Assembly: GCA_002269645.1 (NCBI GenBank) | Contig: NIVC01001605.1 | Location: 29,218-93,217 of the forward strand | DNA length: 64,000 nt | Source: Macrostomum lignano | Lineage: Eukaryota | Direction of reading: 5' to 3' | Part shown: piece by piece, positions 29,484 to 47,857 of the stretch | Numbering within the stretch: the stretch's first letter is position 1 | Layout of the letters: every line of letters begins with the position of its first letter | Translations under genes and position numbers: made by a program | The notes under the pieces: generated by a model | Told to the model about the DNA's origin: nothing | Seen by the model: the letters and a program-made list of their open reading frames with translations, nothing else | Databases searched by the model: none

Positions 29484-30639
29484 TGGGCGTTGCGATGACC
29501 GGGCTGTCCGCAGCTATAGCAGATTATAGCTCTCTTTGGCGGGCTGGCTACCTGCTGTTGGTCACGCTGCACCAGGTGATCCAGCATTCGCTGCTGCTTC
29601 TCATCAAGTCGGTTAGAGTCAGTAAGGCTTGGGCGGTGACGTCGGGTTTCGGGTCGCCGTCCTCCTCCCCGTCCAACATCCTAACCGGGGGTTGAGCAGA
29701 TCGGTGCGCCAATTCTTTGGCGCCTTCTAGTCGTCGTAGCTCTCGAATCGCAGCAAGAAGATTGTTCGGGCGAACCCAGTACAGCCGTTCGCGCAGATCT
29801 GGAGTCGTCCGGATACCAGCAAGAAATTGATCAGTAATCTCCTTCTCGCGGTCTTCAGGATGCATTCGAGGATATGCACGTTCACCCAGAGTTCTCAGGG
29901 CGTCAGCGAACTCTTCTGCTGACTCATTCTTGCCTTGTTGACGACGCCTAAACAGCTCTCTATACTCATCAGCACCACCATGACGGGCAAATCGCTCAAT
30001 CAGACGCTGCTTGACCTCCTCGTAGCTGGCGAAACGCGGGAGTTTCATACTAAGCAAAGAAGGATATGCAGTAGCCAAATCAAGACTCGCAATGAGGTGT
30101 TGCTTCATCTCGAACGGGTCGACGATGCGCTCCATCTCGCAACGCTGCTCGAACGCGGCAAGCCAGACATGAATGTCCTGACTTGGAGTATACTTCACAA
30201 TCTTAACTTGTTTACTCACAGGCCGCTCCATCTGCTGCTGCAGAGCTGCCATCATGGTCCTCTCGTCCTGGTGCGTGATGTTCCGGCCGATGTTGTCCAG
30301 GCCTTGCAGAAGCTCGTCTGGCGGGTCGTCGGACACGTCGCTTCTGGCACCTCGCCTCGGCGTCGGCTGCTGACCAAAGTCGTTGATCGCTGCTGCTGCT
30401 GCGGCGTCCGCTGCCGCAGGCCTCGAACTGCTGATGTGCTGATCCAGCCGGCTGCTGCACCGGCTCTCGTCTCGTTCGTTGAACATGTTGAACTCGTAGT
30501 AGTTACTGGCCGATGTCGTTCTCGAAAGAGCGGTTGGCTTGGGTGTGTCGTAGTCGGATCTCACCGCTGCGTCACCAGTGAAATAGATAGCGTTTTTCTC
30601 GGGGTGGCCTGGTAGGTCTTTGAATCCCACCGCTGCCAC
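29315..30639 (-). CDS. gag: Gypsy Gag with CCHC knuckle; frameshift near 29602; likely ATG at MFNERD
   Basis: WLAAFEQRCEM, FRRRQQGKNESAEEFADALRTL. CYSCGQPGHRNAQC lies in the adjacent frame; one extra G gives LMEKQQRMLDH. Confidence 0.85.
29456..29462 (-). promoter_or_regulatory. -1 ribosomal frameshift slippery site G GGA AAC (gag to pol)
   Basis: X XXY YYZ heptamer in the gag frame just after the knuckle. Pol is in the -1 frame. A downstream GCGGAG/CTCCGC stem follows. Confidence 0.75.
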
Positions 30640-30641
30640 CA
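30556..30641 (-). promoter_or_regulatory. Two tRNA-Leu primer-binding sites: perfect one at 30622-30641 inside the LTR, bulged one at 30556-30577 just outside
   Basis: TGGTGGCAGCGGTGGGATTC is complementary to the conserved tRNA-Leu(AAG/UAG) 3' end GAAUCCCACCGCUGCCACCA. The second site reads TGGTGACGCAGCGGTGAGATCC. Confidence 0.85.
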
Positions 30642-31639
30642 GTGAAGTACAATGGGTTTTCTTCCCGGTTTAGGCCCTTGCGGATTACCTTAATCTTGAG
30701 CCTCTTCAGTGGGAAGTTCTCTCAACTCTCTCAGTAGCGTAGGTAGTGCTGCCACCAGTTCCTTCAGGTCTCGGCCTTCGATAAGGTGAGCTTCCCGTCG
30801 GAACGAAATAAACAAGTCAACGAACTCAGCACAGTGTGCAGATTTGCAGATTAATGAACAAGGCGTCCTGATCAGCAGATCCCCGCCGGGCTCAGGGGTG
30901 GCTGGGAAGGCAGTGTTAGCCTCCCTTAGGCTTGGGCTTTAGTGGGGTCTCAGTCAGACCAGTACAAACGGATTCAGTACGCAAAGGGCACTTAGTTAGA
31001 CACTGACGCACACGGGTTCTTAGTGAATTCTCCGCAGATAAGAAGCCAAAAATCCTTGACGGAAACAAGGGGAGAGGGGTCCTATTTATAGCCGGGAAAC
31101 ACCCACGCACAAGACCTCGTGACTTGTTCTATTTTTAGAACTGACGTCACTTGAGATCTCGAGGCAGGGTCTCAGTGCGCGCAAGACCTCGTGACTCGTT
31201 CTATTTTTAGAACTGACGTCACTTGAGGTCTCCGGCCAGAGTACACGCGGCTGTGACTCAGTTGCTATTTTTAGCAACATGAGTCACTCCTCTCCTTAGA
31301 GAAGGGAGGGTTCCGAAAGCACGTGATTCTCCCGGTAAACAGGGCCAACGAGTGCAGTAAACATGTTTACTGCACTTTAGGACTCGAAGAACGCAGAGTC
31401 TGTCATGTGACTTGCTCACATGACAGAGGAAAACGGGACGGGAACGAAACAGAGACAGCCCACAGCAGAGAAGCTGAGGGCTGAGAACAGAGACGCAGAA
31501 GGGCAGAACAGGCCAAGGGCAGCAACAGACGGGCCAAGGGGGGTGGGAAGCTGACCAGCGGCAGACAGCAACCCAGGGCGAGGGCGAGGGAGACTGCTGA
31601 CAAAGTGGGACGCCTAACATCAACTAGCGGATCACTACA
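30579..31639 (-). repeat. 5' LTR of the Gypsy element
   Basis: Starts TGTAGT, ends ATTTCA, followed by a PBS-like sequence. TATA CTATAAATAG at 31091-31082. Confidence 0.95.
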
Positions 31640-32214: not shown

Positions 32215-34996
32215 CAGCTGCTCGGGCACGTTGTACGCGCGGATCACCTTTGGGAGCACAGACCTGACGAGCGACCGAGTCGAATGCCTTCTTGAAATCT
32301 ATGAAGATAACAAAAAGGATCGACTGGCGTATCCATGCTTCCTCGATGACTCGCCGAAGAGCCAGCTAGCTAGGATCTGCGTCACTGTGCCGCGATGGGG
32401 CCGAAGCCGTTCTGTTTATGGCGCAGGTACGGATCCAGCACGGGCTGCAACCGCGATAGCAGCATCTGGTTGAACAACTTCGCAGCGCAGGACTGAATGC
32501 AGATACCTCGATGCTCCTCAAGCCTCGTGGTGCCCGGCTTCTTAGGACTTCAAAGATGTGCGCCGTGGTCCATTCGTTGGTTGCCTCCTCACCGAATAGC
32601 ACGCGATGCATCACTCTGGCAACCTCACTGGCCACTGGCGCAGCGCCTCGATGGGCACATCATCCGGACTGTTGCCTGTTGGGCGAGCCTCACAACGTCG
32701 GCTGTGCTGACTTGTGCTAGACCTAGCTGAAGCTCTCCTCTGCCGGCAACGGCATCTCCGGCGGCAGCGTCAGACTGCCTGGCAGCGGGGGTGGCGGCGC
32801 GTTGACAATGGCTGCGAGGAAGTCGCGCAGCTCGTTCCTGCGCTCGCCTGCAGAGTCGCCCGCCAGGTTTAGCGATATGCGCCGCTTTCGCCCCATCAGA
32901 GCATTGATAGCCGAACAGGCCACGCGACCTATGGAATCGGGCCCGAATGGCGTCATCAACAGCAGCCTGCTGGCACTGCAGATAGACAGCCGTTTAGGCC
33001 TTCGTGTTGGTCGCCTGCTCAAACGGAGTCTCTCCGGCTCTTCCCTCGCTAGCCGAATCGCGGGGTCGTCTTGCCATACCGACTGCTCCCTCCGGGCCGT
33101 TCGCATCAGCGGGACTGCTTGTTCCGCGGCGGCTGGAACTGCAGCGCTCGGCACCTCCACGCTTGCCGCCGAGCGCAGTGATGAAAGCGCTAGCAAAGCG
33201 GCTGTGCGTGTTGGCGTCCCTGAGCGCGCGGTAGTAGCGCCGCGGTGGCCGCTTCGGCGGACGGTAGAGCGGATCTCGAAGACGAAGGTCGCAGACGAGG
33301 AGTCGATGATCAGACCACAGAGCCAGCGGCGTGATGGCGCGGCATTTGACGAAGCGCACCAGCACATGATCGAGCTGTGCCTGCCTCCGTGTTGTGTTCC
33401 CGCCACGCGCGATCCAACGCCTGCGCCTGTAGCCCACAAAAGTTGCGAGCCTGCCCAGCGGCTTGCGGAAGCGGGTGTTGGCCGACACCATGTCCTGCCG
33501 CTCTAGGAAGTCCTCCAGCGCTCCGGTGTTGCCGTTCTCACGCGGTGTGACGAACAGTGACCGTTCGGACCTACGCAAAACCGCATTCAGGTCTCCGAGG
33601 ATTAACACTGTGTCACGCTGCGCCTTTGCCTCCACCTGTAACGAGAGCTGCTCAAAGATTTCTAGAGCCTCGTCAGGTCGGGTGGCAGGAGGCGCGTGCG
33701 CAGAACAGGCGAGCGTTTCGGCCGCGAAGCCGAACGTCGACCCGGAGCAGCCGAGGGGACAGAGAGACGCAGCGACATCTCAGCCGCAGCCTCGGTCCGA
33801 CCAGCGCTCCAACTCCTTCACGGCCTCGTCGTCCGCCGATGTGTAGTACATGTAGAGGGTCCATCCGGCGCCCAGATCCTCACAGTGTAGCCCCGGATCA
33901 GCCTTAATAGACACCTCCTGCAGTGCGATGACGTCACAGCTTTGGTCGAGCGCTAGCTTTGCCAGAGCCCCTCTCTGCCAGACGGCCTTGAGCGTGCGAC
34001 AGTTCCGCAATCACGGCGATGTACCGTGATACGAAAGCTGCTGTTTCAACACCGGACGGCATCGGACTTATTTGAGACATCCTACCGGGGTGCTTCAGGG
34101 AGATGCTCGCGCCGTTCCTGTTCGTTCTGGTGCTTGACTGGGTGCTGCGGACCGCGATCTTCCTACTAACGACGACGGCGTTCTGTTGCGGCGACGCGTG
34201 GGTCGATGTCAACCGGAGAGGCGGCTCAGCGTGCTTGGCTACGCCGACGACATCGCCCTGCTGTCCTCAACTGTCGAGGGTGCCCAGCGACAAGTGGACA
34301 AGCTAGTTGCTGTTGCGGCGAGTGTCGGCCTGGTGGTCATCGGCCTGATGGACGACATCGAGACTGCGATTTTGTGCCGAGGCGCTGATGGATAGGCGAC
34401 AAACTTCCGCGTGTCAGCAGTTCGTCTACCTCGGCGGTCTGGTTCCCGGCGTCTGCGAGGATTTGCGGCGTCGCCGCGGGCTTGCCTGGGCTGCCTTTTG
34501 TTCTGTGAGGCCTGACGTGCAGTCCGAGGTCTTACCTGACCGCCTGAGGGCGGCGTTGTTTCAGGCGGTAATCGAGACCGTCCTGCTGTACAACGCCGAG
34601 ACCTGGACGCTGATGAAGTCGCTCGAGCAACAAGTTGACGCAGCGCACGCTGGCCTGCTGCGCGCTGCCTTCAAGATTGGCTACGAGTGAGTGGCCAACG
34701 CGGCTTTGTATCGCCACGCCGGCCGGGTCCGTCCACAGCGAGCTGTTGCGCCGTCGGCGGCTACAGCTGGAAGGCCACATCATCCGCGCCGAGTCTTACT
34801 GAGCCGGTGCAGGAGCTGTGCAGCGGCCAACGCGCAGTCACCCTACTGGCGGGGGCAGGCGCGCACTCAGCGTTTCGTCGACTGCCTGCTGGCTGACGCT
34901 GGCGCTCTGGATTCGGCCGGCGGCGTGGCGTTTATTCGCGACCTGGCCTTGAAGCGCGCCCTGTGACGCTAAATGCGTATTCTGTTGTTGTTGTTG
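32215..34996. mobile_element. RTE-like LINE with inverted 5' part: APE + RT N-terminus on minus (32215-34010), RT C-terminus + tail on plus (34003-34996)
   Basis: APE motifs DVIALQEV, ILGDLNA, QLDHVLV, SDHRLL on minus. APFLFVLV and YADDIALLS on plus. (GTT)n tail at 34983-34996. Confidence 0.88.
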
Positions 34997-36604
34997 TTAT
35001 AATTTCCTAATCGCGATTACCTAGATCAGAAGGCACAATGTGTTTCTCCCGAAAGCCCCACATATGTAACATTTTACTTTGCATGTTCATGGGCGCGTAA
35101 CATAACATTTATATTATATATACGAGTACTATTGTAGGTGATTGCAACACACATGTATGTAACGCGCTTTACATACGTACATGTATATATCTATTTAATA
35201 CATACATGTATGTATGCTCTCAATCCCGATCACCTTAAAGTTTTAGTTTTATCTATAATTTAAGAAAATTATCCATTAATTCATCAAATAGTCTATGGAT
35301 GGATATACTTATCCAAGAAAGCAAACCATCGTTGCGCCACCATATTTAATTTGCTTCTTCAGTTTTTGACAGCTGGCCTCATCTCTTTTTGCAAGAGATT
35401 ATAATGTGGCAGGAAAAAAATCGAATAAAGGACTCACTTCTTTAAAACTGAGTGAGTTTTGTGTGCAACGAATGCTTCGTTAGAAATTCTTTGGGACTAG
35501 TACTGTGTCTTTGATTTCCAGCTGTATGTCCTTCTTCCTAACGATTTTCACCTGACAAATTAATCCTTAATATAAGTGAATAATGTAATATTTTTGTTTA
35601 CTTTAGAAATACTTTATTATTTTAAACTTAACATATTCTTAGGCAAAAATTGTAAATTATTTTGTTAATCAAAGGTAAAAATACGCTTTGAACATAATTT
35701 TAGCGAGATTTTAAAAGCCACTCTTTTACGACATGTTATATACAAAGCTTACAAACTAACCAATGAAACCGTTAAACGGTTCGCGTCGGTACAGCCACTT
35801 CCCCCAAAATTCCCAATGACCCCTATTCTTTTTGCTCTTTAACAGGTGTTTTAACTAGCGAGCTGCTGGGTTCAGAAAATTAAAACCCTGACGGCCTGAG
35901 GCTTAGAAAATTGCCTCAATTCCCAACTAGGTGTTGAAATCTCACAATAGCATTGAATTGGTACTTCAGCTAGGCCTAAGCCTTAAATCTTATTAACTTA
36001 ATTGTACGATGGTGCTTTATTGATACAATAATTTATTGTTAAAAAGGCTTTTGGAAACTATGGATATGCCTATGGTAGATAGCTGCTCTTATGGCTACGA
36101 CTATGAAAACATGGTAATTGCAGTTGTAGTCACATTCCATAGATTCCTGTAAGTGTAGCCATGCCCTTAGTTTTAAATTTGAAGAATTTCACTAGCAAAT
36201 TCTAACTATTAATGTGAAGAAGTTTAATAATGGTGCTTTCAGTAGTAGGTAGATATGTAATCTTAAAAAGTGCAATTAAAGTGCTTGTTTTAGTTTTTAT
36301 ATTAATTTGCAGTTGTTTAAATGGAGTAATTATAGGCATGGCAGCTGTGTTTATGACTATAATATTGGAGCTTATAGGCACAACAGACGTGTCTATAATA
36401 TTTGAGCTTATAGGCATGGCTTAGGCCTATATTTATAAAAATTGATACAGAATGGATATTCTATAAGGCTGTCTTACAAGCAAATGGTGGCTTTGTGAAC
36501 AGGCCTATGTCACCTGCCTTGTAATGGCATATACTATAGCAAGAAGCAAGGCTCAAATCCCAAGTAGGCAGTCTTTTTTTCAAATTTAAATTTTTTAGTG
36601 AATA

Positions 36605-36725
36605 AAATTTTTTTAATTTAATTTTATTTGAATTTTATTCAAATAAAATTCAAATTCAAATTTTAATTTTATTTGAATTTTATTCAAATAAAATTCAAAT
36701 TCAAATTTTAATTTTATTTGAATAA
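36605..36725. repeat. AT-only 46-bp tandem repeat (about 2.5 copies) with a 13-bp-arm hairpin
   Basis: tttgaattttatt-ca-aataaaattcaaa occurs twice. Confidence 0.85.
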
Positions 36726-36988
36726 GACTAACACTAAATCTTAAGGCTAAGTCAAATTCCAATTATATATATAGCTATATCTGTAAGTATTCAAACTTAT
36801 AGATTATTACAAATTTTATATTATAAGAAGTTTGCCATATTTTTGTTTATGCTCTTCACTTTAGTTATTGCTAGATCACATATTTAATGAGACTATTAAT
36901 GTTTAACTAATTTCAAAATGCAGCCAATCCCTATTGGAATAAATGCTTTAGAAAAAAGTCAAACTATTTTACTGCACTTTAGGATTAT

Positions 36989-37298
36989 TAGAGATGTTCC
37001 AAAAGATCTGCAGTTTCGTCGAAATCAAAATTTGCTAACTTTCCAAAATCAAAATTAAAATTTCCCAAAATCATAATTCAGAAAAACAAAGTTTAGTATG
37101 ATCAGCACTCACTTTTTACTTTCAATTTACTGCTTAAGTATAAGTAATGCATGTATATGTATTAGAAAATAGTTTATTTTTAGCAACTCTTTAGACACTA
37201 CCAAAATTTTCACTTCTAAATTTTTTTTCGAAATTGAAATTTGCTTTAAAAAATTTCAAATTTTGGAAAATTGAAATTGAATTTTTGGAACATCTCTA
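36989..37298. mobile_element. hAT-like MITE
   Basis: Perfect 16-bp TIR TAGAGATGTTCCAAAA / TTTTGGAACATCTCTA. Degenerate 8-bp flanks. Confidence 0.7.
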
Positions 37299-37650
37299 AG
37301 CTTAATAAACTACGAGTGTATAAGCCCCTTCAACAGAGATATTATACCCATTTCCATGTATATATATTTGGCATTTGCTAGAGCAACAGCCAATAAGAAA
37401 GGGCAGCGTGCGCAGGCAATGCGCCTGTGCGCTTTGCGCTTTAGAAAAATTTCAAAAGTGCGCTAGACACTGTCTGTGGTTTTACAACTTTTTCCTATAG
37501 GGCAGCCAATAAGTATAAAAAAATTATTTTTTTAGTAGCTTTTTTTTATTTTCTGCATTATAGACATGGCTGCCCTGATTGCAGCGCATGGGCATTTTGG
37601 CGGAAGGCGTCCGGCGCAGATCAGCCTGCGCGGCGCAGCATTGGTGGTGG

Positions 37651-38780
37651 ACCAGGGGTAAGTCGCAAAAATGCCACCCCATAGAATACAGGCGTAGTAC
37701 TAATTAGATGCCGAGGCATTTAGGCTTGATAAGACAGTCATAGTTACTCTTGCCGTTTACCCAAAACTGCGATAATTTTGCTTTAGGGTTTCTTTCACAG
37801 GTAAGTCATTTCACAGCGTGGCGCAGGTTGTGTAGGCATCTGGCGTACTTAATCCATGCGCTGCAATAGGGATGGCTGCATATCTCTAAGTGTGGCATTG
37901 TTTAAATACTCAAGCCAAGGTTATCTTCCTACATCCCAAATGCCTTTTGGCACCTTTAAGCTTGAGTTTTTGCTTTTTAAATGCATTTTTGTGCCTCTAA
38001 GCTTGATTTTTTGCCCTTTGCATGCATTTTTTGCATCTTTAAGCTTGATTTTTGCCTCACACATGATTTTTTGCACCTCCTAGCTTATAAATTAGTGCTC
38101 TTTATACTCATGTTGGCATCCTAAAACTTTGACTGCCCCCTCCCCCTAAATAAAACTCTAGATCTGCCACTGCTAATAGTTCTAGGCCTACTTCTATAGA
38201 CTCATCTGCCATCTAAACTAGGACATAATGTATGCTACATTTTCTATGGTAGTATAGATAGTATAAACAGTTTTTTTAAAGTGATTTTACAATGACCTAC
38301 AGTGGTATGCATATGCACATTGAACAAAGCTAAGTTTACTATTAATTTTTTGTTGGCTATTAAGATATGGCTAAAGTCTAATCTGGCTACTGTATACCTA
38401 ATCCTAGTAGAACAACTAGAAATTTGTTGAGGGGTAGATTCTGGAAAGTAAAGACCCAAAAGAGGGAGGCAGAAGAATGGCTTGCAAAAATTTGCTTGGT
38501 CCCCCCTTTGATTTTTTCTGGTCTTTGCCTGGGGGGGAGCATACATGCGCAACCTCCAAAATTCAGTCAGCCTTGCGACTTAGTTTTAACAAAAATGCAA
38601 CGTAGTTTTTGGCCAAAAATGCAACTTACATGTAAAAAAACTCTAACAGAAAATTAACGCAACTTTGGGTAAATGGCAAGAGTAACTATGACTGTCTTAT
38701 TAAGTCAAAATGCCTTGTCAGCTACTTAGTACTAATACTTTGGTATTTTTTCGGGTGGGCATTTTTGCAACTTCCTTGGT
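37651..38780. mobile_element. Non-autonomous DNA transposon with ~130-bp imperfect TIRs
   Basis: 37651-37790 is the reverse complement of 38640-38780 (e.g. taagacagtcatagttactcttgcc). Confidence 0.75.
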
Positions 38781-40045
38781 TGGCCAGATCGGCCAACTCG
38801 GCCGATTGTTGCGCATGTATGAGGGGGAGGACAACTGCCCCACTTTCTGTCCCCTCCTTGGCTTTGGTTGTGCCATTATCTAATCCAAATAGGGCCCTGA
38901 GTTATTAGCCAATGGCTTTGAAGCTTAAGCTAAGGCAATTAAAATAACTTGAGCCAAATAGCAATACAAAGCTTTTGAGCAATACTTAGAAAAGGCTAAC
39001 TAAAGGAAGATTATTTAAAGTAAGCTTGATAGCATTCAACATGATATAGCAAAGCAGTAGCAAGCCAAGTTGATAAAGAAAGTAATAATGCCTAACCTAA
39101 GGGATGTTAAATGCTACATTAAGAGGCTTTGCTACAAACTACTATAGTGAAGGTCTAAAATATGCCAATTATCCCCTTTTTCAAGCCAGACACTTTAACC
39201 TTACCCCCTAGGGCATATACATTATATACTCTTGCATAAGCCCTGAACCCTTTCCTTGCATGCATCTTATATTCATCCTATCATATATCCTTGCACTCTC
39301 CAATAGTATACACATACTATTGTGCATACTTAGCCAGGCTGATCTGCAGTAGACACCATCTCCCAATATGCTTATGAGCTGCAATTAGAAAGTTTTTTTG
39401 TTTCATTTATGTAAGCTAATATTTAAACAAATCTTAAAATATGGATACTTTGTCAAGTATGTAAGAACATGGTTCATAGATAAATATTTAATAGAAGTAG
39501 ACTTTTATTCAATTTTAATTTAAGGAATTTTCTTTTTTTAGGGGTTTAAATATGATCTATGCAATCATTATTATTTGGTACACAGATATTGAATATGAAA
39601 AGTGTCTCTTATTTATTAACATCTGTTTATTTATTCTTTTCAGTAATTTCCTTTTGTGCCAAGTAAAGGCTTCTGCTATTGAAACTAACAGTTGGGTATG
39701 CATGCAAGTATTTCACTTGCAGTCATAACATCATGGAGACATTTCTCTGAGTCTGAGTTCTGATTGACTTATAACTTGATAGATTGGTAAGTAAAATTAA
39801 AATTAAAAATGTGTACCTGTTCAATAGTAGAATGTTATGGTTATGCTCGTATTTCTATATGAGTTTACATAGATTGCATAATTATATCTAAATAAGTTTT
39901 TGTGTGCTAAATAGAATGGCTAGATTTTGTGTGTATTTTTAATTAGATTTACTAATAAACCATTGTATTAATATTTCTACTGGCTAAACCCATCTAAAGC
40001 TGTTAGATTAACATTTTTAGTGGTTAGATAGAAGACACAGTTTGG

Positions 40046-40118
40046 TGAATATGATGAACAAAACTAATTGTCTGCATGCAAATTGAAGACGTTTTAATCA
40101 CCAAGATCGCTGAGACTC
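40046..40118 (+). ncRNA. SNORD24: Box C/D snoRNA U24, copy 1
   Basis: Box C ATGATGA 40051, C' TGAAGAC, guide ATCACCAAGATCG, box D CTGA 40110-40113. The guide pairs with LSU rRNA GAUCUUGGUGGU. Confidence 0.85.
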
Positions 40119-40292
40119 ATGATTATGCTAGCCAATATAAATTATTACTTCAGAGTTGCAAATGCATAATTTATTTGTGTTTTCCCTTTCATTTTTTGTC
40201 AGGTCATCTGGTGCTGGTCGAGTCAAGTTTTATGGATTCTCGTGTAAGTTAATTCACATCTTCTACTTCTACTATAAGTAGTTCAATAAGAT

Positions 40293-40366
40293 TTTGAACT
40301 GATGAGAAATTAATAATTGCTTGAGTCGCTATGAAGACTTGTTATCACCAAGATCGCTGATGAAAA
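40293..40366 (+). ncRNA. SNORD24: Box C/D snoRNA U24, copy 2
   Basis: Box C CTGATGA 40299, same guide, box D 40357-40360, terminal ATTTT/AAAAT stem. Confidence 0.85.
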
Positions 40367-40554
40367 TATATAATTGCATTGATGAATTTGTTTTTAAATA
40401 GTTCTGAAATACTTGTGTAACTTTAACAAAATTTCTGTTTTTTTAGAACAGACATGGCCTGGAGATATGTTGATTTGGTAAGTTTTAGATCAATGCTTTT
40501 AGTGTCATTAAAATTCACTCTGTTGTACTTATTTTTGAGTAGTAATTCCAGTAT

Positions 40555-40634
40555 TATTTATGATGAAAATATTAACTGTCTTGAAGTCCGTCAGGTCAAT
40601 GAAGACTGTTTATCACCAAGATCGCTGAAAATAT
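40555..40634 (+). ncRNA. SNORD24: Box C/D snoRNA U24, copy 3
   Basis: Box C ATGATGA 40560, same guide, box D 40625-40628, terminal TATTT/AAATA stem. Confidence 0.85.
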
Positions 40635-40807
40635 TTGTTTCTAAAAAATAAAAAATTCATTTATTTTAGTTAATTTATTTAAACAGTTTAGTTTATTAAA
40701 ATTTTCGTTGCAGATGGAGATTCGCATTAAAACTTGTGCTGCATCACTCATACAAACTAAAGGGTAAGAAATTGAAATTATTTTATTTTTTTATCTTACA
40801 ATTCGCC

Positions 40808-40941
40808 ACAATATGATGCTATACTTGAATTTCTTCACCTGATTAGCAAATAATAAATCGGCAGTTGACACATTTTTAATTCTATTTTTGTGTTTTGTGC
40901 CAATTTATTTTCTGTGAAGAGCATTTTGACATCTGATTATA
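40808..40941 (+). ncRNA. SNORD36: Box C/D snoRNA U36C/snR47-like
   Basis: Box C variant ATGATGC 40813; D' guide TTGAATTTCTTCAC + CTGA (40839-40842), complementary to LSU GUGAAGAAAUUCAA; C' GTGAAGA 40914; box D 40933-40936. Confidence 0.75.
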
Positions 40942-41457
40942 AAATTTTAAACACCTGTTTATACTATTGGAATTTTAATATATTTTATGTCAAATTATTA
41001 CCGTTTCTTCTTACCTTTCATTCTCCAGGCTGTGCATCTTCGGAACGACTGATCTGCTTTATCAGTGTACTGCCAGTGAATTACTGTCTTCACGCCTTTT
41101 TATGGAACAGTATTGTCTATCGCGTCACATATTTAAACTGTCTAATTGCATTTTATCAAATATACTTCGAAAAGAATTTTTATCTTTTCTAAAAAAATTC
41201 CCGAATTGCAATTAGTCTCTTCCTGCAAGCGTTTATTTTTTACAAAGTAGTAAAATTATGATTGAAGGCTCCACACGCCGAGTCGTGGTATAATTATTTA
41301 ATTAAAAACTCATGTCACTTTAAAACACTGAGGTAAATGCCTAGGTGTGTGGGATTACTTTTCTGGGGGTTGGGCAGGTGTTGTGCACTGATATTTTGCA
41401 GCTCGGTGGACACCTGACACCTTAATTGTCCATTCGTTCCTCCATTCTGAAAGAATC

Positions 41458-42160
41458 GCCCCCCCCCATCAAACACCCACCCACCTGCATCAGGAATGGC
41501 CCCATCAGACACCCACCCACCTGCATCAGGAATGGCACCATCAAACACCCACCCACCTGCATCAGGAATGGCCCCATCAAACACCCACCCACCTGCATCA
41601 GGAATGGCCCCATCAAACACCCACCCACCTGCATCAGGAATGGCCCCATCAAACACCCACCCACCTGCATCAGGAATGGCCCCATCAGACACCCACCCAC
41701 CTGCATCAGGAATGGCACCATCAAACACCCACATCTGCATCAGGAATGGCCCCATCAAACACCCACCCACCTGCATCAGGAATGGCACCATCAAACACCC
41801 ACCCACCTGCATCAGGAATGGCCCCATCAGACACCCACCCACCTGCATCAGGAATGGCACCATCAAACACCCACCCACCTGCATCAGGAATGGCCCCATC
41901 AAACACCCACACCTGCATCAGGAATGGCCCCATCAAACACCCACCCACCTGCATCAGGAATGGCACCCTCAAACACCCACACCTGCATCAGGAATGGCCC
42001 CATCATACACCCACCCACCTGCATCAGGAATGGCCCCATCAAACACCCACACCTGCATCAGGAATGGCCCCATCAAACACCCACCCACCTGCATCAGGAA
42101 TGGCACCATCAGACACCCACCCACCTGCATCAGGAATGGCACCATCAAACACCCACCTGT
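41458..42160. repeat. 36-bp minisatellite (with 32-bp variants), about 20 copies
   Basis: Unit cccatcaaacacccacccacctgcatcaggaatggc. Confidence 0.95.
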
Positions 42161-42509: not shown

Positions 42510-43571
42510 TTAGATGTCGCGCAGCTCGTTCCAGAACAGGTTTGCCAGCGCAGACGGGTCTCTTTGCATCGGTCGCAGCAGGAAAAAACTGCCAGGGGAT
42601 TTGCTATCATCGTTCAGCCGCTCGATCTGCAGTATGCTGCTGATATTGTTGTAGACGCCGCAGTAGCCAGGCGCGCTGAACACGGTGACGCAGCGTCTGT
42701 TCAACTGTGACTGATAGCCGTTCATAGCCACCTGATGGCCTCTGATCAGCATCTGAGTCTGGAACAGCCGCATCACCTCTTCTAGAGCTTGACCAGAGAA
42801 TGAGAACGAACAGCCGCGCTTGTTTGGCAGCCACTTGGCCTCAGTCAGAGTCTCGTTGCTCTGGCTGAACTGGGCGCTGAACGCGGTGCCAATTGGGTCC
42901 GACCACATGATGTCGCACAGGATGCCGGGCCTGACCGGTTCCACCGGCTTCTTGCACTCGTTCAACGCCTGGACATTGGCCTGCTGCCCGCCTCGAAGGT
43001 TAAATGGTTGCAGCATGAAGTTTGGCGAGATGCCGCCGTGACAGCAGAAGATCTGGCCATCAATGATGGCGCACATCGGCATCCACTGGAAGGTCCTGAC
43101 GAATCCGCCAAGCACTTTGTGTGCCTGAATTCGCACCATTCGTTGGCCGATTTCGTCTTTGAATCCGTACCTGCAGCAGATGTTGGCCGTCTCGTGGTTG
43201 CCTCGGAGCAGGTACACCGAGTTCGGGTACAGCAGCATCAGCACAAACAGCAGCGTCATCACCTCGAGCGAATACTTGCCTCGGTCGATGTAGTCGCCGA
43301 GGAACAGAAAGCGCGACTCGGGCGGCTGGCCGAGCGCGTCGAATATTCGAAGCAGATCGTGGAACTGGCCGTGCAAGTCGCCCACAATGTTGATTGGCGT
43401 CTTGATGTGGATGCAGATGTCTGTGGATCTCATTGCCTCCATGGCCATGTGGCACACTGAAAGGCACTCAGCCGCAGTGAGTGGTACGTGATTTTCAACA
43501 TCCTCAGTGTCAAATGTGAGCAACCGGTTGGCCAGGTCTTTCAGGTCGACGTTCTGAAGCACTCGGGCCAT
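42510..43571 (-). CDS. Intronless PPP-family (PP1-like) phosphatase B, 353 aa, paralog of 18785-19846
   Basis: Same motif set, same length, collinear with A. Confidence 0.95.
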   Translation of the reverse strand: MARVLQNVDLKDLANRLLTFDTEDVENHVPLTAAECLSVCHMAMEAMRSTDICIHIKTPINIVGDLHGQFHDLLRIFDALGQPPESRFLFLGDYIDRGKYSLEVMTLLFVLMLLYPNSVYLLRGNHETANICCRYGFKDEIGQRMVRIQAHKVLGGFVRTFQWMPMCAIIDGQIFCCHGGISPNFMLQPFNLRGGQQANVQALNECKKPVEPVRPGILCDIMWSDPIGTAFSAQFSQSNETLTEAKWLPNKRGCSFSFSGQALEEVMRLFQTQMLIRGHQVAMNGYQSQLNRRCVTVFSAPGYCGVYNNISSILQIERLNDDSKSPGSFFLLRPMQRDPSALANLFWNELRDI

Positions 43572-44443: not shown

Positions 44444-46318
44444 TCAAGTTGGAGTACTGGAGGGACCCGGTAGATCAGGTATTTCTTGAATATCTCCTCC
44501 GTTATTGTCAGCAGCATCAAGAAGACGAACACTTTCGATGTAGGTCGTATTATCTTGCCTCAATTCCAACTTTGCCAGGTGTCTTCTGATCTCGTCCAGG
44601 CAGCCGACACTGTGGAATCTGTACAATATTGAGTACGGCAAGAAATAAAGGATCTTTGCTCCAAGTGGAATAGATGAACTCCAATCCTTGATAGGATCTG
44701 TGTCGACAATCATTACAAAGCTGGAAAAAGTGAACATCAGCCACTCTGACAAGTTGATCAGCATCATGGCGACAGAACACTGCTTTAACCAGTAAATATT
44801 TGAAGTGGCATGGATTGTCCAGTCGAACGCCAGAGTCAGTGCTAATACTTCTAATTGCAAGAAGGTGTCAATTATACCAAATGGCAGCAGGTCTACCAGA
44901 GCCACAACAAATGGAGCGGAGTTATTGGCGGGTGCACCATTGAAATTAACTTGCGTGGGATCGATAATGCTCTGAACGTTGTATACCAATAAAAAAGAAT
45001 TGGTAAAAAATATGTCAGTACATGCAGTCATGAACAATAGATTGATGTCCACTGCGTGACGTCTTAGCCGCTGTTGATCAACAGGGTTCTGAGGCTGCCT
45101 GCAAAGATAGAGTCTGCCTAAAATATTCAAATTTTGTCTTAGAACATTGGAGTCCGGATTCTGATAGCCAACCCGAAAACAATAAATCAAAGGGAACGCA
45201 TTGGCAATGTGCAAGAACATCATAACAAAGTAGAATAAGATGTACTGTTGCATATGGTTAAGAGACCGGAAATAGAAGATGTAAATGAGAGTAGCTGTCA
45301 GTGGGATCAGGCCAAGCCCCAAGCCGCACCAATACTGGGCCACGGTGTCGGTTTCCACTGCCCGATCGTGCAAATTTTCGTGCAAATTTTGGCTCAGCAA
45401 TCTCTGCAAATCGTCTTCATTTGCGACACGATGCTCTCGAAATAGTTTAGCCAAATGACGAATGTTTATCGCCCAGAAAATGCCGAAAATGGCGCAGAGA
45501 ATGGAATATTCAGCGGTTAACGGAACGATGTATGGCAGAAGTTTGTCTGATGCAGACGATTCGCTTGTTGAATGATTGCTGAACTGTTCAAAGACTTCAG
45601 AGTTAACGCTTAATATCCAAGACACAAGGTTTGTGCTGATTAGATTGGCCATTAGAATAAAGAATAAAATTGAGAATTTATTCGGACTCTGGTTGCCATA
45701 CAATGCAAAGAATATGGTCTGAAGTATAGTAAACGCGACTTGTAGGATTGGAATTAGAAGCTTGTCAAGTATCCACGAGAAACTTGGATGCGAGCTGCAG
45801 TGGATAAGCTGGATAAAACCGTCAATGGATTTTATGCCATTTCCAACGACGACGAACAGGCCCAGCAAAATGCAGGCGGCTAGCAGGAATGTGGAAGGCA
45901 CGAAAGCGTGCTTATCCAGCACAGGAATCCAGTATGAGAGCCCTTGGAGCAACCAATTTTTGCCTTCCACTGACACTCTGACATTGTCAAGCTTCTTTTT
46001 GTTAAACAACCGATACAAACAAAACAGCAAAGACAGTAAGGCCAGAGCCAACAATAAAAGGACTAAACGAAACATTTCCGACCATAATAGCTTGAAGTCA
46101 GCACAATTCTCGTCCCCTCTCTCCATGTTGTTGTCTCTTACCACGAGAAGCGTACTCACCAGTGGTAAGATCACTAGTAAGCTGATGATGATCAAAAAAA
46201 AATATAACAGCTGGAGGAGCTTGCAGTATTTTTTCATCCTGCTGCTTATTAGTGTAACTTCAGTCTGCTCATCCTCACTCCTAAGCAAGCGGTCGGCTTC
46301 GCTTCCACCTGATGACAT
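44444..46318 (-). CDS. otop: Otopetrin-family proton channel, intronless, 624 aa
   Basis: About 12 hydrophobic segments; otopetrin signatures FTILQTIF, STNLVSWI, PYIVPLTAEYSI, INLSEWL, ILYRFHSVGCL. Confidence 0.85.
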   Translation of the reverse strand: MSSGGSEADRLLRSEDEQTEVTLISSRMKKYCKLLQLLYFFLIIISLLVILPLVSTLLVVRDNNMERGDENCADFKLLWSEMFRLVLLLLALALLSLLFCLYRLFNKKKLDNVRVSVEGKNWLLQGLSYWIPVLDKHAFVPSTFLLAACILLGLFVVVGNGIKSIDGFIQLIHCSSHPSFSWILDKLLIPILQVAFTILQTIFFALYGNQSPNKFSILFFILMANLISTNLVSWILSVNSEVFEQFSNHSTSESSASDKLLPYIVPLTAEYSILCAIFGIFWAINIRHLAKLFREHRVANEDDLQRLLSQNLHENLHDRAVETDTVAQYWCGLGLGLIPLTATLIYIFYFRSLNHMQQYILFYFVMMFLHIANAFPLIYCFRVGYQNPDSNVLRQNLNILGRLYLCRQPQNPVDQQRLRRHAVDINLLFMTACTDIFFTNSFLLVYNVQSIIDPTQVNFNGAPANNSAPFVVALVDLLPFGIIDTFLQLEVLALTLAFDWTIHATSNIYWLKQCSVAMMLINLSEWLMFTFSSFVMIVDTDPIKDWSSSIPLGAKILYFLPYSILYRFHSVGCLDEIRRHLAKLELRQDNTTYIESVRLLDAADNNGGDIQEIPDLPGPSSTPT

Positions 46319-47857
46319 GACCGAAAATGCTGCAATAACACTGTGGTGGCTCAGGATATCGCTTAAACAGTTCGTAATTCGTTAAGCTTAGACGAAGCCG
46401 AAGATAAATGAAAATAACAGCTTCTTATAGTAAGGTACTTTGCAAATCTGCCTCTGGTAATTGGATGTCTACTTTTAAAACAAACAATTAAGACGGGGTG
46501 CAGTTAACTAAAAGCAATGCCGCTCAAGACTCAGATTCCATATATTTAATATTTTTTTCTACAATTCTGTGGGGGGCCGGCCCGCGCATCCACCCCTCAG
46601 TTGCCACGCCAGGTTCCTGGGCCAGCGAATTACCGTCTCGCCTTTTGATGTCTGGCTGAAATGGATGAGAGCTGAAGTGTTTGCTGTGCACTGCTTGTAC
46701 TCGTACTATTGTAGACCCCACCCCGCCTGTTAGCCCATTTCTATTGTTCTAGCTCTTACCTTGTGCCTACTCAAATTCCCCTACCTTGCTTCTTGCCCTT
46801 ATAGACTTCATCTGCTTTTGAGTATATTCTTCTAAACTTCTGAGGCCTATATGCAGCGAATGCCCTTTACCCTAGTTCCTCTTTATGTGAATCCTTGCAT
46901 TAGAATAAAAAATGCGAGTATAGCACACAAACGCACTTTCTTAAAAAGAAAATCAGAAGCCACAAGTTTCTATAGTTACGAGTAAAGTTGACTTTTAGAT
47001 TGTTCCGGTTTGCTTGGATCGAAGAAAAAAGTGCCCCAATAATAACAAAATTAATTGTACATGTACAAATATACATGCGCACTGTGCATTGCGAATGCAT
47101 TTGGCATACGGCAGAATGTCCTGCAGATTTAAACTGCATTGCGGACTGAAGTTTACCAAAAAGGCTCCAGAGCAGTAAGGTCTGCTGTGATGAAAATACC
47201 AAGTTCTGTTTCCAAAATGTCTGGCTGCAACAGTAGAATGGATCCAACATGGTGCTGTAATGCTGTAACTTTTATGTATGCGACTGAGTACACATTTTAA
47301 CAAAATCGAATTTCCTAAGTGCTAATAACATTGTTTTTTAGTTTAGTTAGTAAAGATAGATACAAAGAATAATTTTAGTAGTAGAGATAATCAAATATAG
47401 AGACACTGGAAGTAGGAAAATAAAAAAGATACGAAATTATAAACCGTAATGGTGATTTGGTGATTAGTGATTTGCCGACACTGAACTTCGATTGCCTACA
47501 TATTAATTAATAGCACCTACCAAATGCAGCAAACCAGCAAGCAATATTTTATGATTAAGTACAAAAAACAAACGACTATGCAAACAAGAAATGCAGCTTC
47601 ATAGGACAGAATTCACAATAAACTTGGACAATGACAGCCCTTGAGAGATGAGCGAGTAACCGGTTTTATTTTCTCGTTATCTTTTGCTTGCGTGTCAGAA
47701 AGACTCTTAAAACACACTGCTGGCTTACATCTCAAAACTCACAGCCTTAGCCTAAAACTCCAGCTTCGTTATTCTATGAGGTCGGCTGTTTGGATAGCTG
47801 GGGTCAAGACAAGTAGAAGGCTGTTGTTTTTTTCGCTCCGGTGTTGAGCACTTTTCC

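What the first reader, a model, noticed from the sequence alone, without database searches (positions are those of the whole stretch)
39723..41200. Unannotated micro-exon snoRNA host with U24 x3 and U36, one per intron
The host is invisible in the ORF track. Each D box ends 85-92 nt before the 3' splice AG (89, 91, 85, 92), typical of splicing-dependent intronic C/D snoRNAs. The guides match the sites of yeast U24 (Cm1437) and snR47/U36 (Am2220). In vertebrates U24 and U36 share RPL7A introns; here the pair appears linked in a host with no RPL7A-like ORF, suggesting ancient linkage surviving loss or change of the coding host.
Basis: partly seen in the sequence, partly recalled or inferred. Interest (0 to 1): 0.75.

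Follow-up and report, generated by a model that had tools for sequence, protein, structure and literature searches.

The report
Flatworm non-coding snoRNA host gene
This is a small, apparently non-protein-coding gene, most likely of the flatworm Macrostomum lignano, whose four introns each carry one box C/D snoRNA (three U24-type, one U36-type) that guides ribosomal RNA methylation; it is real but an ordinary kind of locus, and it recalls the vertebrate RPL7A gene, which hosts the same two snoRNAs.

Summary
Window 39723-41330 (+) has five short exons with GTAAG donors and pyrimidine-tract/AG acceptors. Each of the four introns holds one box C/D snoRNA, whose D box ends 89, 86, 85 and 92 nt before the 3' splice site.

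- **U24 copies:** three copies hit Rfam SNORD24 just under threshold (35.6-40.6 vs 41 bits). Their 3' guide pairs with the genome's own 28S at the U24 site (GAUC*UUGG, human Cm2338). Their 5' guides are degenerate.
- **Fourth snoRNA:** its 5' half carries the SNORD36 consensus guide. It forms 14 Watson-Crick pairs with own 28S at the human Am3703 site. It lacks the 18S guide and fails the Rfam threshold.
- **Host:** the spliced RNA has an 86-codon ORF with no homologue, pN/pS above 2 and a premature stop in two of three homeologous copies. Exons vary like introns; snoRNAs vary about half as much.
- **RPL7A:** it lies elsewhere, has one detected intron and hosts no snoRNA.

This is a Uhg/GAS5-type snoRNA host, a new member of a known kind. 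The "ancient U24-U36 linkage" idea remains untested. No expression data were available.

The parts
39300..39722 (+). Upstream region that probably holds the promoter and possibly the true start of exon 1. Pyrimidine tracts lie at 39634-39641 and 39647-39655.
   Evidence: Only 3.1% of sites vary among the three homeologous copies, against 5.9% in intron remainder. There is no E-box and no canonical TATA box. The transcription start site is unknown.
39723..39786 (+). Exon 1 (3' end firm, 5' end uncertain).
   Evidence: The donor is TTG|GTAAGT at 39787. The AG before 39723 reads CG in the C1474 homeolog, so it is probably not a conserved acceptor. An 8-nt indel and 10.5% variable sites separate the homeologs.
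39787..40202 (+). Intron 1 (416 nt).
   Evidence: GTAAGT...TTTTTTGTCAG, conserved in the homeologs.
40046..40117 (+). sno1: U24-type box C/D snoRNA. C box 40052-40057, C' 40084-40089, D box 40110-40113.
   Evidence: SNORD24 35.6 bits here and 42.3 bits for its homeolog orthologues, against a gathering score of 41. The D guide AUCACCAAGAUCG pairs with own 28S and puts C1702 at the 5th position. One variable site in 73.
40203..40243 (+). Exon 2 (41 nt).
   Evidence: Splice sites. A 6-nt indel and 2 substitutions separate the homeologs.
40244..40446 (+). Intron 2 (203 nt).
   Evidence: GTAAGT...CTGTTTTTTTAG.
40294..40364 (+). sno2: U24-type box C/D snoRNA. C box 40300-40305, C' 40332-40337, D box 40357-40360.
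   Evidence: SNORD24 37.8 bits. The D-guide duplex with own 28S at C1702 is 17 bp (13 Watson-Crick, 4 G-U), reached by 0/300 shuffles.
40447..40477 (+). Exon 3 (31 nt). It contains the ATG of the 86-codon ORF.
   Evidence: Invariant among the homeologs.
40478..40713 (+). Intron 3 (236 nt).
   Evidence: GTAAGT...TTTTCGTTGCAG.
40555..40633 (+). sno3: U24-type box C/D snoRNA. C box 40561-40566, C' 40600-40605, D box 40625-40628, with a 5-bp terminal stem UAUUU/AAAUA.
   Evidence: SNORD24 40.6 bits, E 6.6e-5. The D-guide duplex with own 28S at C1702 is 14 bp, reached by 0/300 shuffles.
40714..40763 (+). Exon 4 (50 nt).
   Evidence: Splice sites. 11.8% of sites vary among the homeologs.
40764..41028 (+). 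Intron 4 (265 nt).
   Evidence: GTAAGA...CATTCTCCAG.
40807..40941 (+). sno4: long (about 130 nt) box C/D snoRNA with a U36-type 5' domain. C box UGAUGC 40814-40819, D' 40839-40842, C' 40915-40920, D box 40933-40936.
   Evidence: The D' guide UUGAAUUUCUUCAC forms 14 Watson-Crick bp with own 28S and puts A2543 at the 5th position, reached by 0/300 shuffles. The guide is identical to the Rfam SNORD36 consensus 5' guide. The D guide GCAUUUUGACAU forms 11 bp with 28S 2531-2541 and predicts C2535, reached by 4/300 shuffles. Variation among homeologs is confined to the D'-C' spacer. The guide plus D' motif occurs only at the three homeologous loci in the genome.
41029..41330 (+). Exon 5 (last exon, 3' end uncertain). 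ATTAAA lies at 41301.
   Evidence: The acceptor is CTCCAG|G. ATTAAA at 41301 is the only AATAAA/ATTAAA hexamer after the acceptor. 3.5% of sites vary over 41030-41200.

Best explanation
The locus is a dedicated snoRNA host gene of the Uhg/GAS5/SNHG type, most likely in Macrostomum lignano.

**Proposed mechanism (inferred).** RNA polymerase II transcribes a precursor of about 1.6-1.7 kb. The spliceosome removes four introns. Each excised intron is debranched and trimmed by exonucleases down to one box C/D snoRNP.

**Role of the spacing (inferred).** Each D box ends 85-92 nt before the 3' splice site. This fits splicing-coupled assembly of the core proteins, including fibrillarin.

**Predicted targets (guide pairings shown, methylation inferred).**
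- The three U24-type snoRNAs redundantly direct 2'-O-methylation of own 28S C1702, equivalent to human Cm2338 and yeast Cm1437, through their D-box guide. Their D' guides are decayed.
- The fourth snoRNA uses its D' guide to methylate own 28S A2543, equivalent to human Am3703 and yeast Am2220. This is the job of human U36C.
- Its D guide pairs with an overlapping stretch 8 nt upstream. It either specifies a new Cm2535 or acts as an accessory or alternative pairing.

**Fate of the exons (inferred).** The spliced exons are a by-product and are probably not translated into a functional protein.
For: **Organism**
- The genome is 764,410,778 b in 5269 contigs. The Mlig_3_7 assembly is 764,424,962 b in 5270 scaffolds.

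**snoRNAs**
- Guides pair with rRNA taken from the same genome, and shuffled guides rarely match the scores.
- The sno4 5' domain equals the SNORD36 consensus guide plus D' box.
- Site equivalences come from PMC3511168 and PMC2653536.

**Splicing architecture**
- There are four GTAAG donors and four Y-tract/AG acceptors, one snoRNA per intron, at 85-92 nt spacing.
- All splice sites are conserved in two homeologous copies that are about 93% identical.

**Non-coding host**
- snoRNAs have 2.8% variable sites, against 5.8% in exons and 5.9% in the rest of the introns. Exons 1 and 2 carry 8-nt and 6-nt indels.
- The only sizeable spliced ORF (86 aa) has pN/pS of 2.0-2.6 and a premature stop in two of three copies. 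An ORF that long appears in 1.6% of shuffles.
- The ORF has no homologue among 5.8 billion protein clusters and no Pfam family.
- It is preceded by upstream ATGs.
- There is no RPL7A similarity.

**Precedent**
- Drosophila Uhg genes have no ORF and one snoRNA per intron (PMC4430873).
Against: - No transcript, junction, small-RNA or methylation data could be consulted. Expression, splicing and the methylation events are therefore all inferred.
- The three U24 copies fall just below Rfam's gathering score, and sno4 falls far below it for SNORD36.
- The sno4 C box ends in C (UGAUGC), and its terminal stem is weak.
- The conservation contrast rests on few substitutions (Fisher p = 0.03 for snoRNA vs intron and 0.06 for snoRNA vs exon).
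- An 86-codon ORF is somewhat longer than chance predicts.
- The transcript's 5' and 3' ends are not defined.
Confidence: 0.8

Rival explanations
1. The host is a protein-coding gene for a small orphan protein of 86 aa (start codon in exon 3, stop in exon 5). The snoRNAs would then sit in the introns of a coding gene.
For: - An ORF of 86 codons or more appears in only 1.6% of dinucleotide shuffles of the spliced RNA.
- The frame is open for 73-86 codons in all three homeologs.
- The ATG context is GACAUGG.
Against: - pN/pS is 2.0-2.6, with 7-9 non-synonymous changes against 1 synonymous.
- A nonsense change removes 13 codons in two of three copies.
- No homologue was found and no Pfam family.
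- One or two upstream ATGs with short ORFs precede it.
- At 93% DNA identity an ORF survives by default, so its retention proves little.
Confidence: 0.08
2. The "exons" are not real. The four snoRNAs would be cut from an unspliced polycistronic precursor by endo- and exonucleases, as in plants, yeast clusters and trypanosomes, or each would have its own promoter.
For: - No junction reads were available.
- A tandem SNORD36-like cluster elsewhere in this genome shows no obvious exons between its copies, so other expression modes may exist in this species.
Against: - There are exactly four GTAAG[T/A] donors in 1 kb, against a background of 0.39 per kb.
- Each donor is paired with a Y-tract/AG acceptor that lies 85-92 nt after a D box.
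- All eight sites are conserved in both homeologs, while neighbouring intron sequence varies.
Confidence: 0.07
3. The locus is the remnant of the ancestral intron-rich RPL7A gene. Its coding function would have passed to an intron-poor copy, so the U24-U36 pairing would be inherited from the bilaterian ancestor.
For: - The same two snoRNA families share RPL7A in chicken and human, with U24 upstream of U36, the same order as here.
- This genome's RPL7A has only two detected coding exons, one detected intron and no snoRNA. That is what a retro-copy replacement would leave.
Against: - No trace of RPL7A similarity remains in the exons (best tblastn E = 5.4).
- Sponge U24 is in RPL5.
- Trichoplax snoRNA hosts are not conserved with human.
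- Broad surveys find snoRNA positions unstable over deep time.
- Seven metagenomic U24 homologues have no U36 guide nearby.
- With many snoRNA families per genome, some shared co-hosting is expected by chance.
Confidence: 0.12

Closest known systems
Drosophila Uhg1-8 and vertebrate UHG/GAS5/SNHG non-coding snoRNA host genes
   Same: Short, poorly conserved exons with no meaningful ORF. One snoRNA per intron, and several copies or families per gene (PMC4430873).
   Different: - It is smaller, with 4 introns.
- No E-box was found upstream.
- 5'TOP status is unknown.
- An 86-codon ORF is present but unconstrained.
- The species is a flatworm, in which I found no published description of a snoRNA host.
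Vertebrate RPL7A with intronic U24 (SNORD24) and U36A/B/C (SNORD36)
   Same: The same two guide specificities (28S Cm2338 and 28S Am3703) are co-hosted, one per intron, with U24 upstream of U36 (PMC2653536).
   Different: - The host here is not RPL7A.
- U24 is triplicated and U36 is single, the reverse of vertebrates.
- The U24 copies lack the second (5') guide.
- The U36-type RNA lacks the 18S guide and is about 130 nt long.
Human U36C versus U36A (guide functions separated between paralogues)
   Same: In human, the 28S-A3703 and 18S-A668 guides are carried by different paralogues (PMC2653536). Here sno4 has the 28S guide, and the C491/C690/C734 family has the 18S guide.
   Different: - The two flatworm specialists are at unlinked loci.
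- sno4 has acquired a different 3' antisense element, directed against 28S 2531-2541.
Sponge U24 orthologues in RPL5 intron 3
   Same: Only one of the two U24 guides is conserved, and the host differs from vertebrate RPL7A (PMC3412847).
   Different: The sponge host is a ribosomal-protein gene. This host is apparently non-coding.

Membership tests
SNORD24 / U24 (Rfam RF00069) | Score at or above Rfam's gathering threshold (41 bits) | tested here: not met
   The window copies score 40.6, 37.8 and 35.6 bits. The orthologues of sno1 on C1474 and C3194 score 42.3 bits and pass. The shortfall of 0.4-5.4 bits comes mainly from weak terminal stems and diverged 5' halves.
SNORD24 / U24 (Rfam RF00069) | Box C (RUGAUGA) and box D (CUGA) at the ends, with internal C' | tested here: met
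   All three have UGAUGA, UGAAGA (C') and CUGA.
SNORD24 / U24 (Rfam RF00069) | 3' antisense element to 28S that places the human C2338 / yeast C1437 equivalent at the 5th nt from box D | tested here: met
   UCACCAAGAUCG|CUGA pairs with own 28S GAUC*UUGGUGG at C1702 over 14-17 bp. It is identical to the Rfam consensus guide.
SNORD24 / U24 (Rfam RF00069) | Second (5') antisense element to 28S about 12-14 nt downstream (human C2352 / yeast A1449-G1450) | tested here: not met
   No significant D' duplex was found at that site. The guide is carried instead by a separate family on C70/C713/C1301/C2006/C611/C3151. I therefore call the window copies U24-type single-guide derivatives, as was reported for sponges.
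SNORD36 / U36 (Rfam RF00049; yeast snR47) | Score at or above Rfam's gathering threshold (30 bits) | tested here: not met
   There was no hit in the 2.4-kb scan. A scan of 151 nt gave 18.4 bits (E = 1), aligning only the C box, the 5' guide and D'.
SNORD36 / U36 (Rfam RF00049; yeast snR47) | 5' antisense element to 28S that places the human A3703 / yeast A2220 equivalent at the 5th nt from D' | tested here: met
   14 of 14 Watson-Crick bp with own 28S, A2543 at position 5, reached by 0/300 shuffles. The guide plus D' are identical to the SNORD36 consensus.
SNORD36 / U36 (Rfam RF00049; yeast snR47) | 3' antisense element to 18S (human A668 / yeast A619) | tested here: not met
   The sno4 D guide pairs with 28S 2531-2541 instead. 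GAGCUUUUUAACC|CUGA is found only in the C491/C690/C734 family. sno4 therefore works like U36C, but I do not file it as a SNORD36 member.
Non-coding snoRNA host gene (Uhg / GAS5 / SNHG type) | One snoRNA per intron, at a fixed distance upstream of the 3' splice site | tested here: met
   4 of 4 introns qualify, with distances of 89, 86, 85 and 92 nt.
Non-coding snoRNA host gene (Uhg / GAS5 / SNHG type) | Exons without a conserved protein-coding frame and less conserved than the snoRNAs | tested here: met
   Exons vary at 5.8% of sites against 2.8% for snoRNAs. Exons 1 and 2 carry indels of 8 and 6 nt. pN/pS of the only ORF is above 2, with a premature stop in 2 of 3 copies and no homologue. Caveat: the comparison spans only about 7% divergence.
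Non-coding snoRNA host gene (Uhg / GAS5 / SNHG type) | Spliced, polyadenylated Pol II transcript, often with a 5'TOP start | not testable with these tools
   No RNA data were available. Pyrimidine tracts at 39634-39655 and ATTAAA at 41301 are only suggestive.
RPL7A as host (vertebrate arrangement) | Flanking exons encode ribosomal protein L7a (eL8) | tested here: not met
   The best tblastn match of human RPL7A against 39300-41500 has E = 5.4. The genuine RPL7A lies on C3079/C240/C1179 and has no snoRNA.

The most novel reading that the evidence does not exclude
The co-hosting of U24 and U36, in the same 5'-to-3' order as in vertebrate RPL7A, would be a linkage inherited from the bilaterian ancestor. 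The flatworm locus would be the decayed original RPL7A, whose coding role passed to an intron-poor copy, so the snoRNAs kept the old gene alive as a non-coding host. A second, smaller point is that both ancestral double-guide snoRNAs (U24 and U36) appear to have been split in this lineage into single-guide specialists at unlinked loci.
Probability: 0.12. Interest if true: 0.55.

Novelty: new member of a known kind. Interest (0 to 1): 0.3.

Why it matters
It adds a clear spiralian/flatworm example of a dedicated multi-snoRNA host gene, in a model organism for which I found no published snoRNA annotation. It predicts three rRNA methylation sites that RiboMeth-seq can check: 28S C1702, A2543 and possibly C2535.

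It also gives a tidy case of subfunctionalisation. Ancestral two-guide snoRNAs (U24 and U36) appear to be divided into single-guide copies at separate loci. If the U24-U36 pairing proved ancestral, it would be a rare case of snoRNA linkage outliving its protein-coding host, and it would run against the prevailing "constrained drift" view. As it stands, the locus is a well-behaved member of a known class.

Tried and rejected
- **Rfam at gathering threshold, whole window:** no hit. The E-value mode was needed.
- **My first exon boundaries:** they were off by one base at three junctions and produced a spurious 93-aa ORF. One search corrects this.
- **D' guides of the three U24 copies:** I found only chance-level duplexes of 9-14 bp with odd D' boxes. 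I treat these guides as decayed.
- **Fifth snoRNA at 41245-41335:** the candidate has AUGAUUGA...CUGA. I rejected it because the window copy has a poor C box and the homeologs lack the D box.
- **More snoRNAs upstream (34500-39400):** nothing at E <= 1 except noise.
- **RPL7A relic in the exons:** nothing found.
- **snoRNA in the RPL7A intron:** none by Rfam and none by my own box/guide scan.
- **Transcript evidence through protein look-up of the spliced ORF:** the ORF is absent from the protein collection, so there were no transcript contigs to fetch.
- **Metagenome scan with the U24 guide, to test U24-U36 linkage elsewhere:** it returned 118 stretches, mostly chance matches. About seven were genuine U24 homologues, none with a U36 guide nearby. 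Their taxa are unknown and probably not animal, so this is weak evidence.
- **Papers on Drosophila and nematode U24/U36 hosts:** they could not be retrieved.
Full report
**What is there**

On the + strand between about 39.7 and 41.3 kb lie four box C/D snoRNA-like units:
- sno1: C box UGAUGA at 40052, C' UGAAGA at 40084, D box CUGA at 40110.
- sno2: C 40300, C' 40332, D 40357.
- sno3: C 40561, C' 40600, D 40625.
- sno4: C UGAUGC at 40814, D' 40839, C' 40915, D 40933.

Each sits in its own interval. Each interval starts with a GTAAG[T/A] donor (39787, 40244, 40478, 40764) and ends with a pyrimidine tract plus AG (ending at 40202, 40446, 40713, 41028). These intervals define exons of 41, 31 and 50 nt between a first and a last exon.

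The D boxes end 89, 86, 85 and 92 nt before the acceptor AG. GTAAG[TA] occurs at 0.39 per kb per strand across the window. Here there are exactly four in 1 kb, each ahead of a snoRNA.

**Whose genome**

The window is part of a 764,410,778-base, 5269-contig assembly. The published Macrostomum lignano assembly Mlig_3_7 is 764,424,962 bases in 5270 scaffolds (PMC5730564). I therefore take the organism to be this flatworm, which is an inference.

Two other contigs carry copies of the locus: C1474 at about 119.4-121.5 kb and C3194 at about 27.5-29.6 kb. They are about 93% identical to the window and collinear with it over more than 20 kb. This fits the species' hidden polyploidy.

**Are they snoRNAs, and which ones**

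Rfam at gathering threshold is silent. An E-value scan gives three SNORD24 hits at 40.6, 37.8 and 35.6 bits against a threshold of 41. The homeologous orthologues of sno1 reach 42.3 bits.

I extracted the genome's own rDNA from contig C4853. Rfam placed the 18S, 5.8S and 28S rRNAs in it.

*U24-type copies.* All three D guides (UCACCAAGAUCG|CUGA) pair with 28S GAUC*UUGGUGG. C1702 falls at the fifth position. The duplexes are 14-17 bp long. Shuffled guides reach the score in 0/300 trials for sno2 and sno3, and in 20/300 for sno1.
- This is the conserved 3' guide of U24. Its site is human Cm2338, listed as yeast Cm1435 in PMC3511168 and usually written Cm1437.
- The 5' (D') guides do not match the second U24 site.
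- That second guide, adapted to the flatworm's own 28S sequence (GGUAGUAGCAAUUAC), is carried by a second SNORD24-like family. That family lies on C70/C713/C1301, C2006 and C611/C3151, and its 3' guide is degenerate.

*sno4.* Its D' guide UUGAAUUUCUUCAC|CUGA forms 14 Watson-Crick pairs with 28S GUGAA*GAAAUUCAA. A2543 falls at position 5, and 0/300 shuffles reach the score.
- The guide and D' box are identical to the Rfam SNORD36 consensus 5' guide.
- The site is that of U36: human Am3703, yeast snR47 Am2218/2220.
- sno4 as a whole scores only 18.4 bits against the SNORD36 threshold of 30, because its 3' half is different.
- Downstream of D' there is a spacer of about 70 nt that varies among homeologs. 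After it, the D guide GCAUUUUGACAU|CUGA pairs with 28S 2531-2541 over 11 bp (4/300 shuffles) and predicts C2535.
- That footprint overlaps the D' footprint (2539-2552). C2535 lies 2 nt from the U37 site, human A3697.
- The canonical U36 18S guide (GAGCUUUUUAACC|CUGA) is found only in a tandem family on C491/C690/C734. Members of that family do pass the SNORD36 threshold.
- The sno4 guide plus D' motif occurs nowhere else in the genome except at the two homeologs.

In this lineage, then, both U24 and U36 appear to be split into single-guide specialists. A similar split of U36 functions between paralogues is known in human (PMC2653536).

**Is the host coding**

After I corrected an off-by-one error in my first splice model, the spliced RNA contains one sizeable ORF. 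It is 86 codons long, starts in exon 3 and ends in exon 5.

Evidence against a coding role:
- No homologue among 5.8 billion protein clusters and no Pfam domain.
- It is preceded by upstream ATGs.
- It carries a nonsense change that shortens it to 73 codons in both homeologs.
- It has 7-9 non-synonymous changes against 1 synonymous change, giving pN/pS of 2.0-2.6.

One point on the other side: an ORF this long arises in 1.6% of dinucleotide shuffles, so it is mildly unusual but not compelling.

Variable sites across the three homeologs:

| Feature | Variable sites |
|---|---|
| All four snoRNAs | 2.8% |
| The three U24 copies | 1.4% |
| Exons | 5.8% |
| Rest of the introns | 5.9% |

Exons 1 and 2 also carry 8-nt and 6-nt indels. 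Exons therefore evolve like introns and snoRNAs do not. The numbers are small (Fisher p = 0.03 and 0.06).

No RPL7A similarity is detectable. The real RPL7A lies on C3079/C240/C1179. It has two detected coding exons and one intron of about 390 nt, and that intron holds no snoRNA.

**Context**

| Window position | Feature |
|---|---|
| 24633-29513 (-) | Ty3/Gypsy-type element and other transposon debris |
| 41464-42157 | 36-bp tandem repeat |
| 42510-43571 (-) | PPP-type phosphatase gene |
| 44444-46381 (-) | Otopetrin-like gene |

The host is thus a stand-alone unit. The 420 nt upstream of exon 1 are as conserved as the snoRNAs (3.1% variable sites) and contain pyrimidine tracts at 39634-39655. 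I found no E-box and no clear TATA box. The AG before 39723 is not conserved in C1474, so the true 5' end probably lies upstream. ATTAAA at 41301 may mark the 3' end.

**Mechanism**

*Shown:*
- the box motifs;
- the guide-target complementarity with the organism's own rRNA;
- the splice-site architecture and its conservation;
- the relaxed evolution of the exons.

*Inferred from established snoRNP biology* (PMC8162545; PMC4430873):
- Pol II transcription, followed by splicing;
- snoRNP assembly coupled to splicing, helped by the fixed distance to the 3' splice site;
- debranching and exonucleolytic trimming;
- fibrillarin-mediated 2'-O-methylation of the nucleotide paired to the fifth guide position.

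**Comparison and novelty**

The locus works like Drosophila Uhg genes and vertebrate GAS5/SNHG genes. It co-hosts the same two guide specificities that vertebrates keep in RPL7A, in the same order.

Whether that is inheritance or coincidence cannot be decided here. These points argue against assuming stability:
- sponge U24 lies in RPL5;
- Trichoplax snoRNA hosts are not conserved with human;
- broad surveys find snoRNA positions unstable over deep time;
- seven metagenomic U24 homologues have no nearby U36 guide.

The intron-poor RPL7A of this species is compatible with a host-replacement scenario.

I rate the locus a new member of a known kind. It is a solid annotation with a small evolutionary curiosity attached.

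Noticed in passing
G000 contigs C491, C690 (207984-222933) and C734; loci L011-L020, L050-L052: A tandem family of SNORD36-like snoRNAs, with at least 6 copies in 15 kb on C690 and several at or above Rfam's threshold. They carry only the 18S guide GAGCUUUUUAACC|CUGA. Low-complexity repeats separate the copies and no obvious coding exons lie between them. Their mode of expression is unclear.
   Followed up: partly
G000 contigs C70, C713, C1301, C2006 (two copies), C611, C3151; loci L033-L038: A second SNORD24-like family keeps the U24 5' guide (AAUUGCUACUC|UUGA). The guide is adapted to a substitution in the flatworm's own 28S (GCAAUUAC instead of GCAAAUAU). The family has a degenerate 3' guide, making it the mirror image of the window's three copies.
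   Followed up: partly
window 40921-40932 versus 40825-40838 (sno4 guides): The two antisense elements of sno4 target overlapping stretches of 28S (2531-2541 and 2539-2552), so they cannot both pair with one rRNA molecule at once. In the predicted fold the D' guide also pairs with the snoRNA's own C' and D-guide region.
   Followed up: partly
G000 rDNA contigs (C4853, C4525, C3672, C1212-C1214 and others): Many 28S copies are interrupted exactly at ...CUCUUAAGG|UAGCC..., which from memory is the classical R2 retrotransposon insertion site. My query matched as two halves several kb apart.
   Followed up: no
L042 43-205 and L043 1420-1582 (G000:C4853 rDNA spacer): A full-length U1 snRNA gene (151.7 bits) sits in the intergenic spacer of each rDNA repeat examined.
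   Followed up: no
window 41464-42157: A 36-bp tandem repeat (about 19.5 copies, 93% matches) lies immediately downstream of the host gene. The array appears longer in the two homeologous contigs.
   Followed up: no
window 24633-30669 (-): A Ty3/Gypsy-type LTR retrotransposon with an uninterrupted 1626-aa pol frame (RT, RNase H, integrase) and an adjacent gag-like ORF.
   Followed up: no
window 42510-43571 (-) and 44444-46381 (-): An intronless PPP-type (Metallophos) phosphatase ORF of 353 aa, with an 85%-identical paralogue about 10 kb away on the homeologous contigs. Next to it is a 645-aa single-exon otopetrin-like membrane protein.
   Followed up: no
window 40366-40446 and 40634-40713: The intron segments between the D box and the 3' splice site of introns 2 and 3 are as conserved among homeologs as the snoRNAs (1.2% variable sites). 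This may reflect constraint on spacing or on the branch site, or it may be chance.
   Followed up: no
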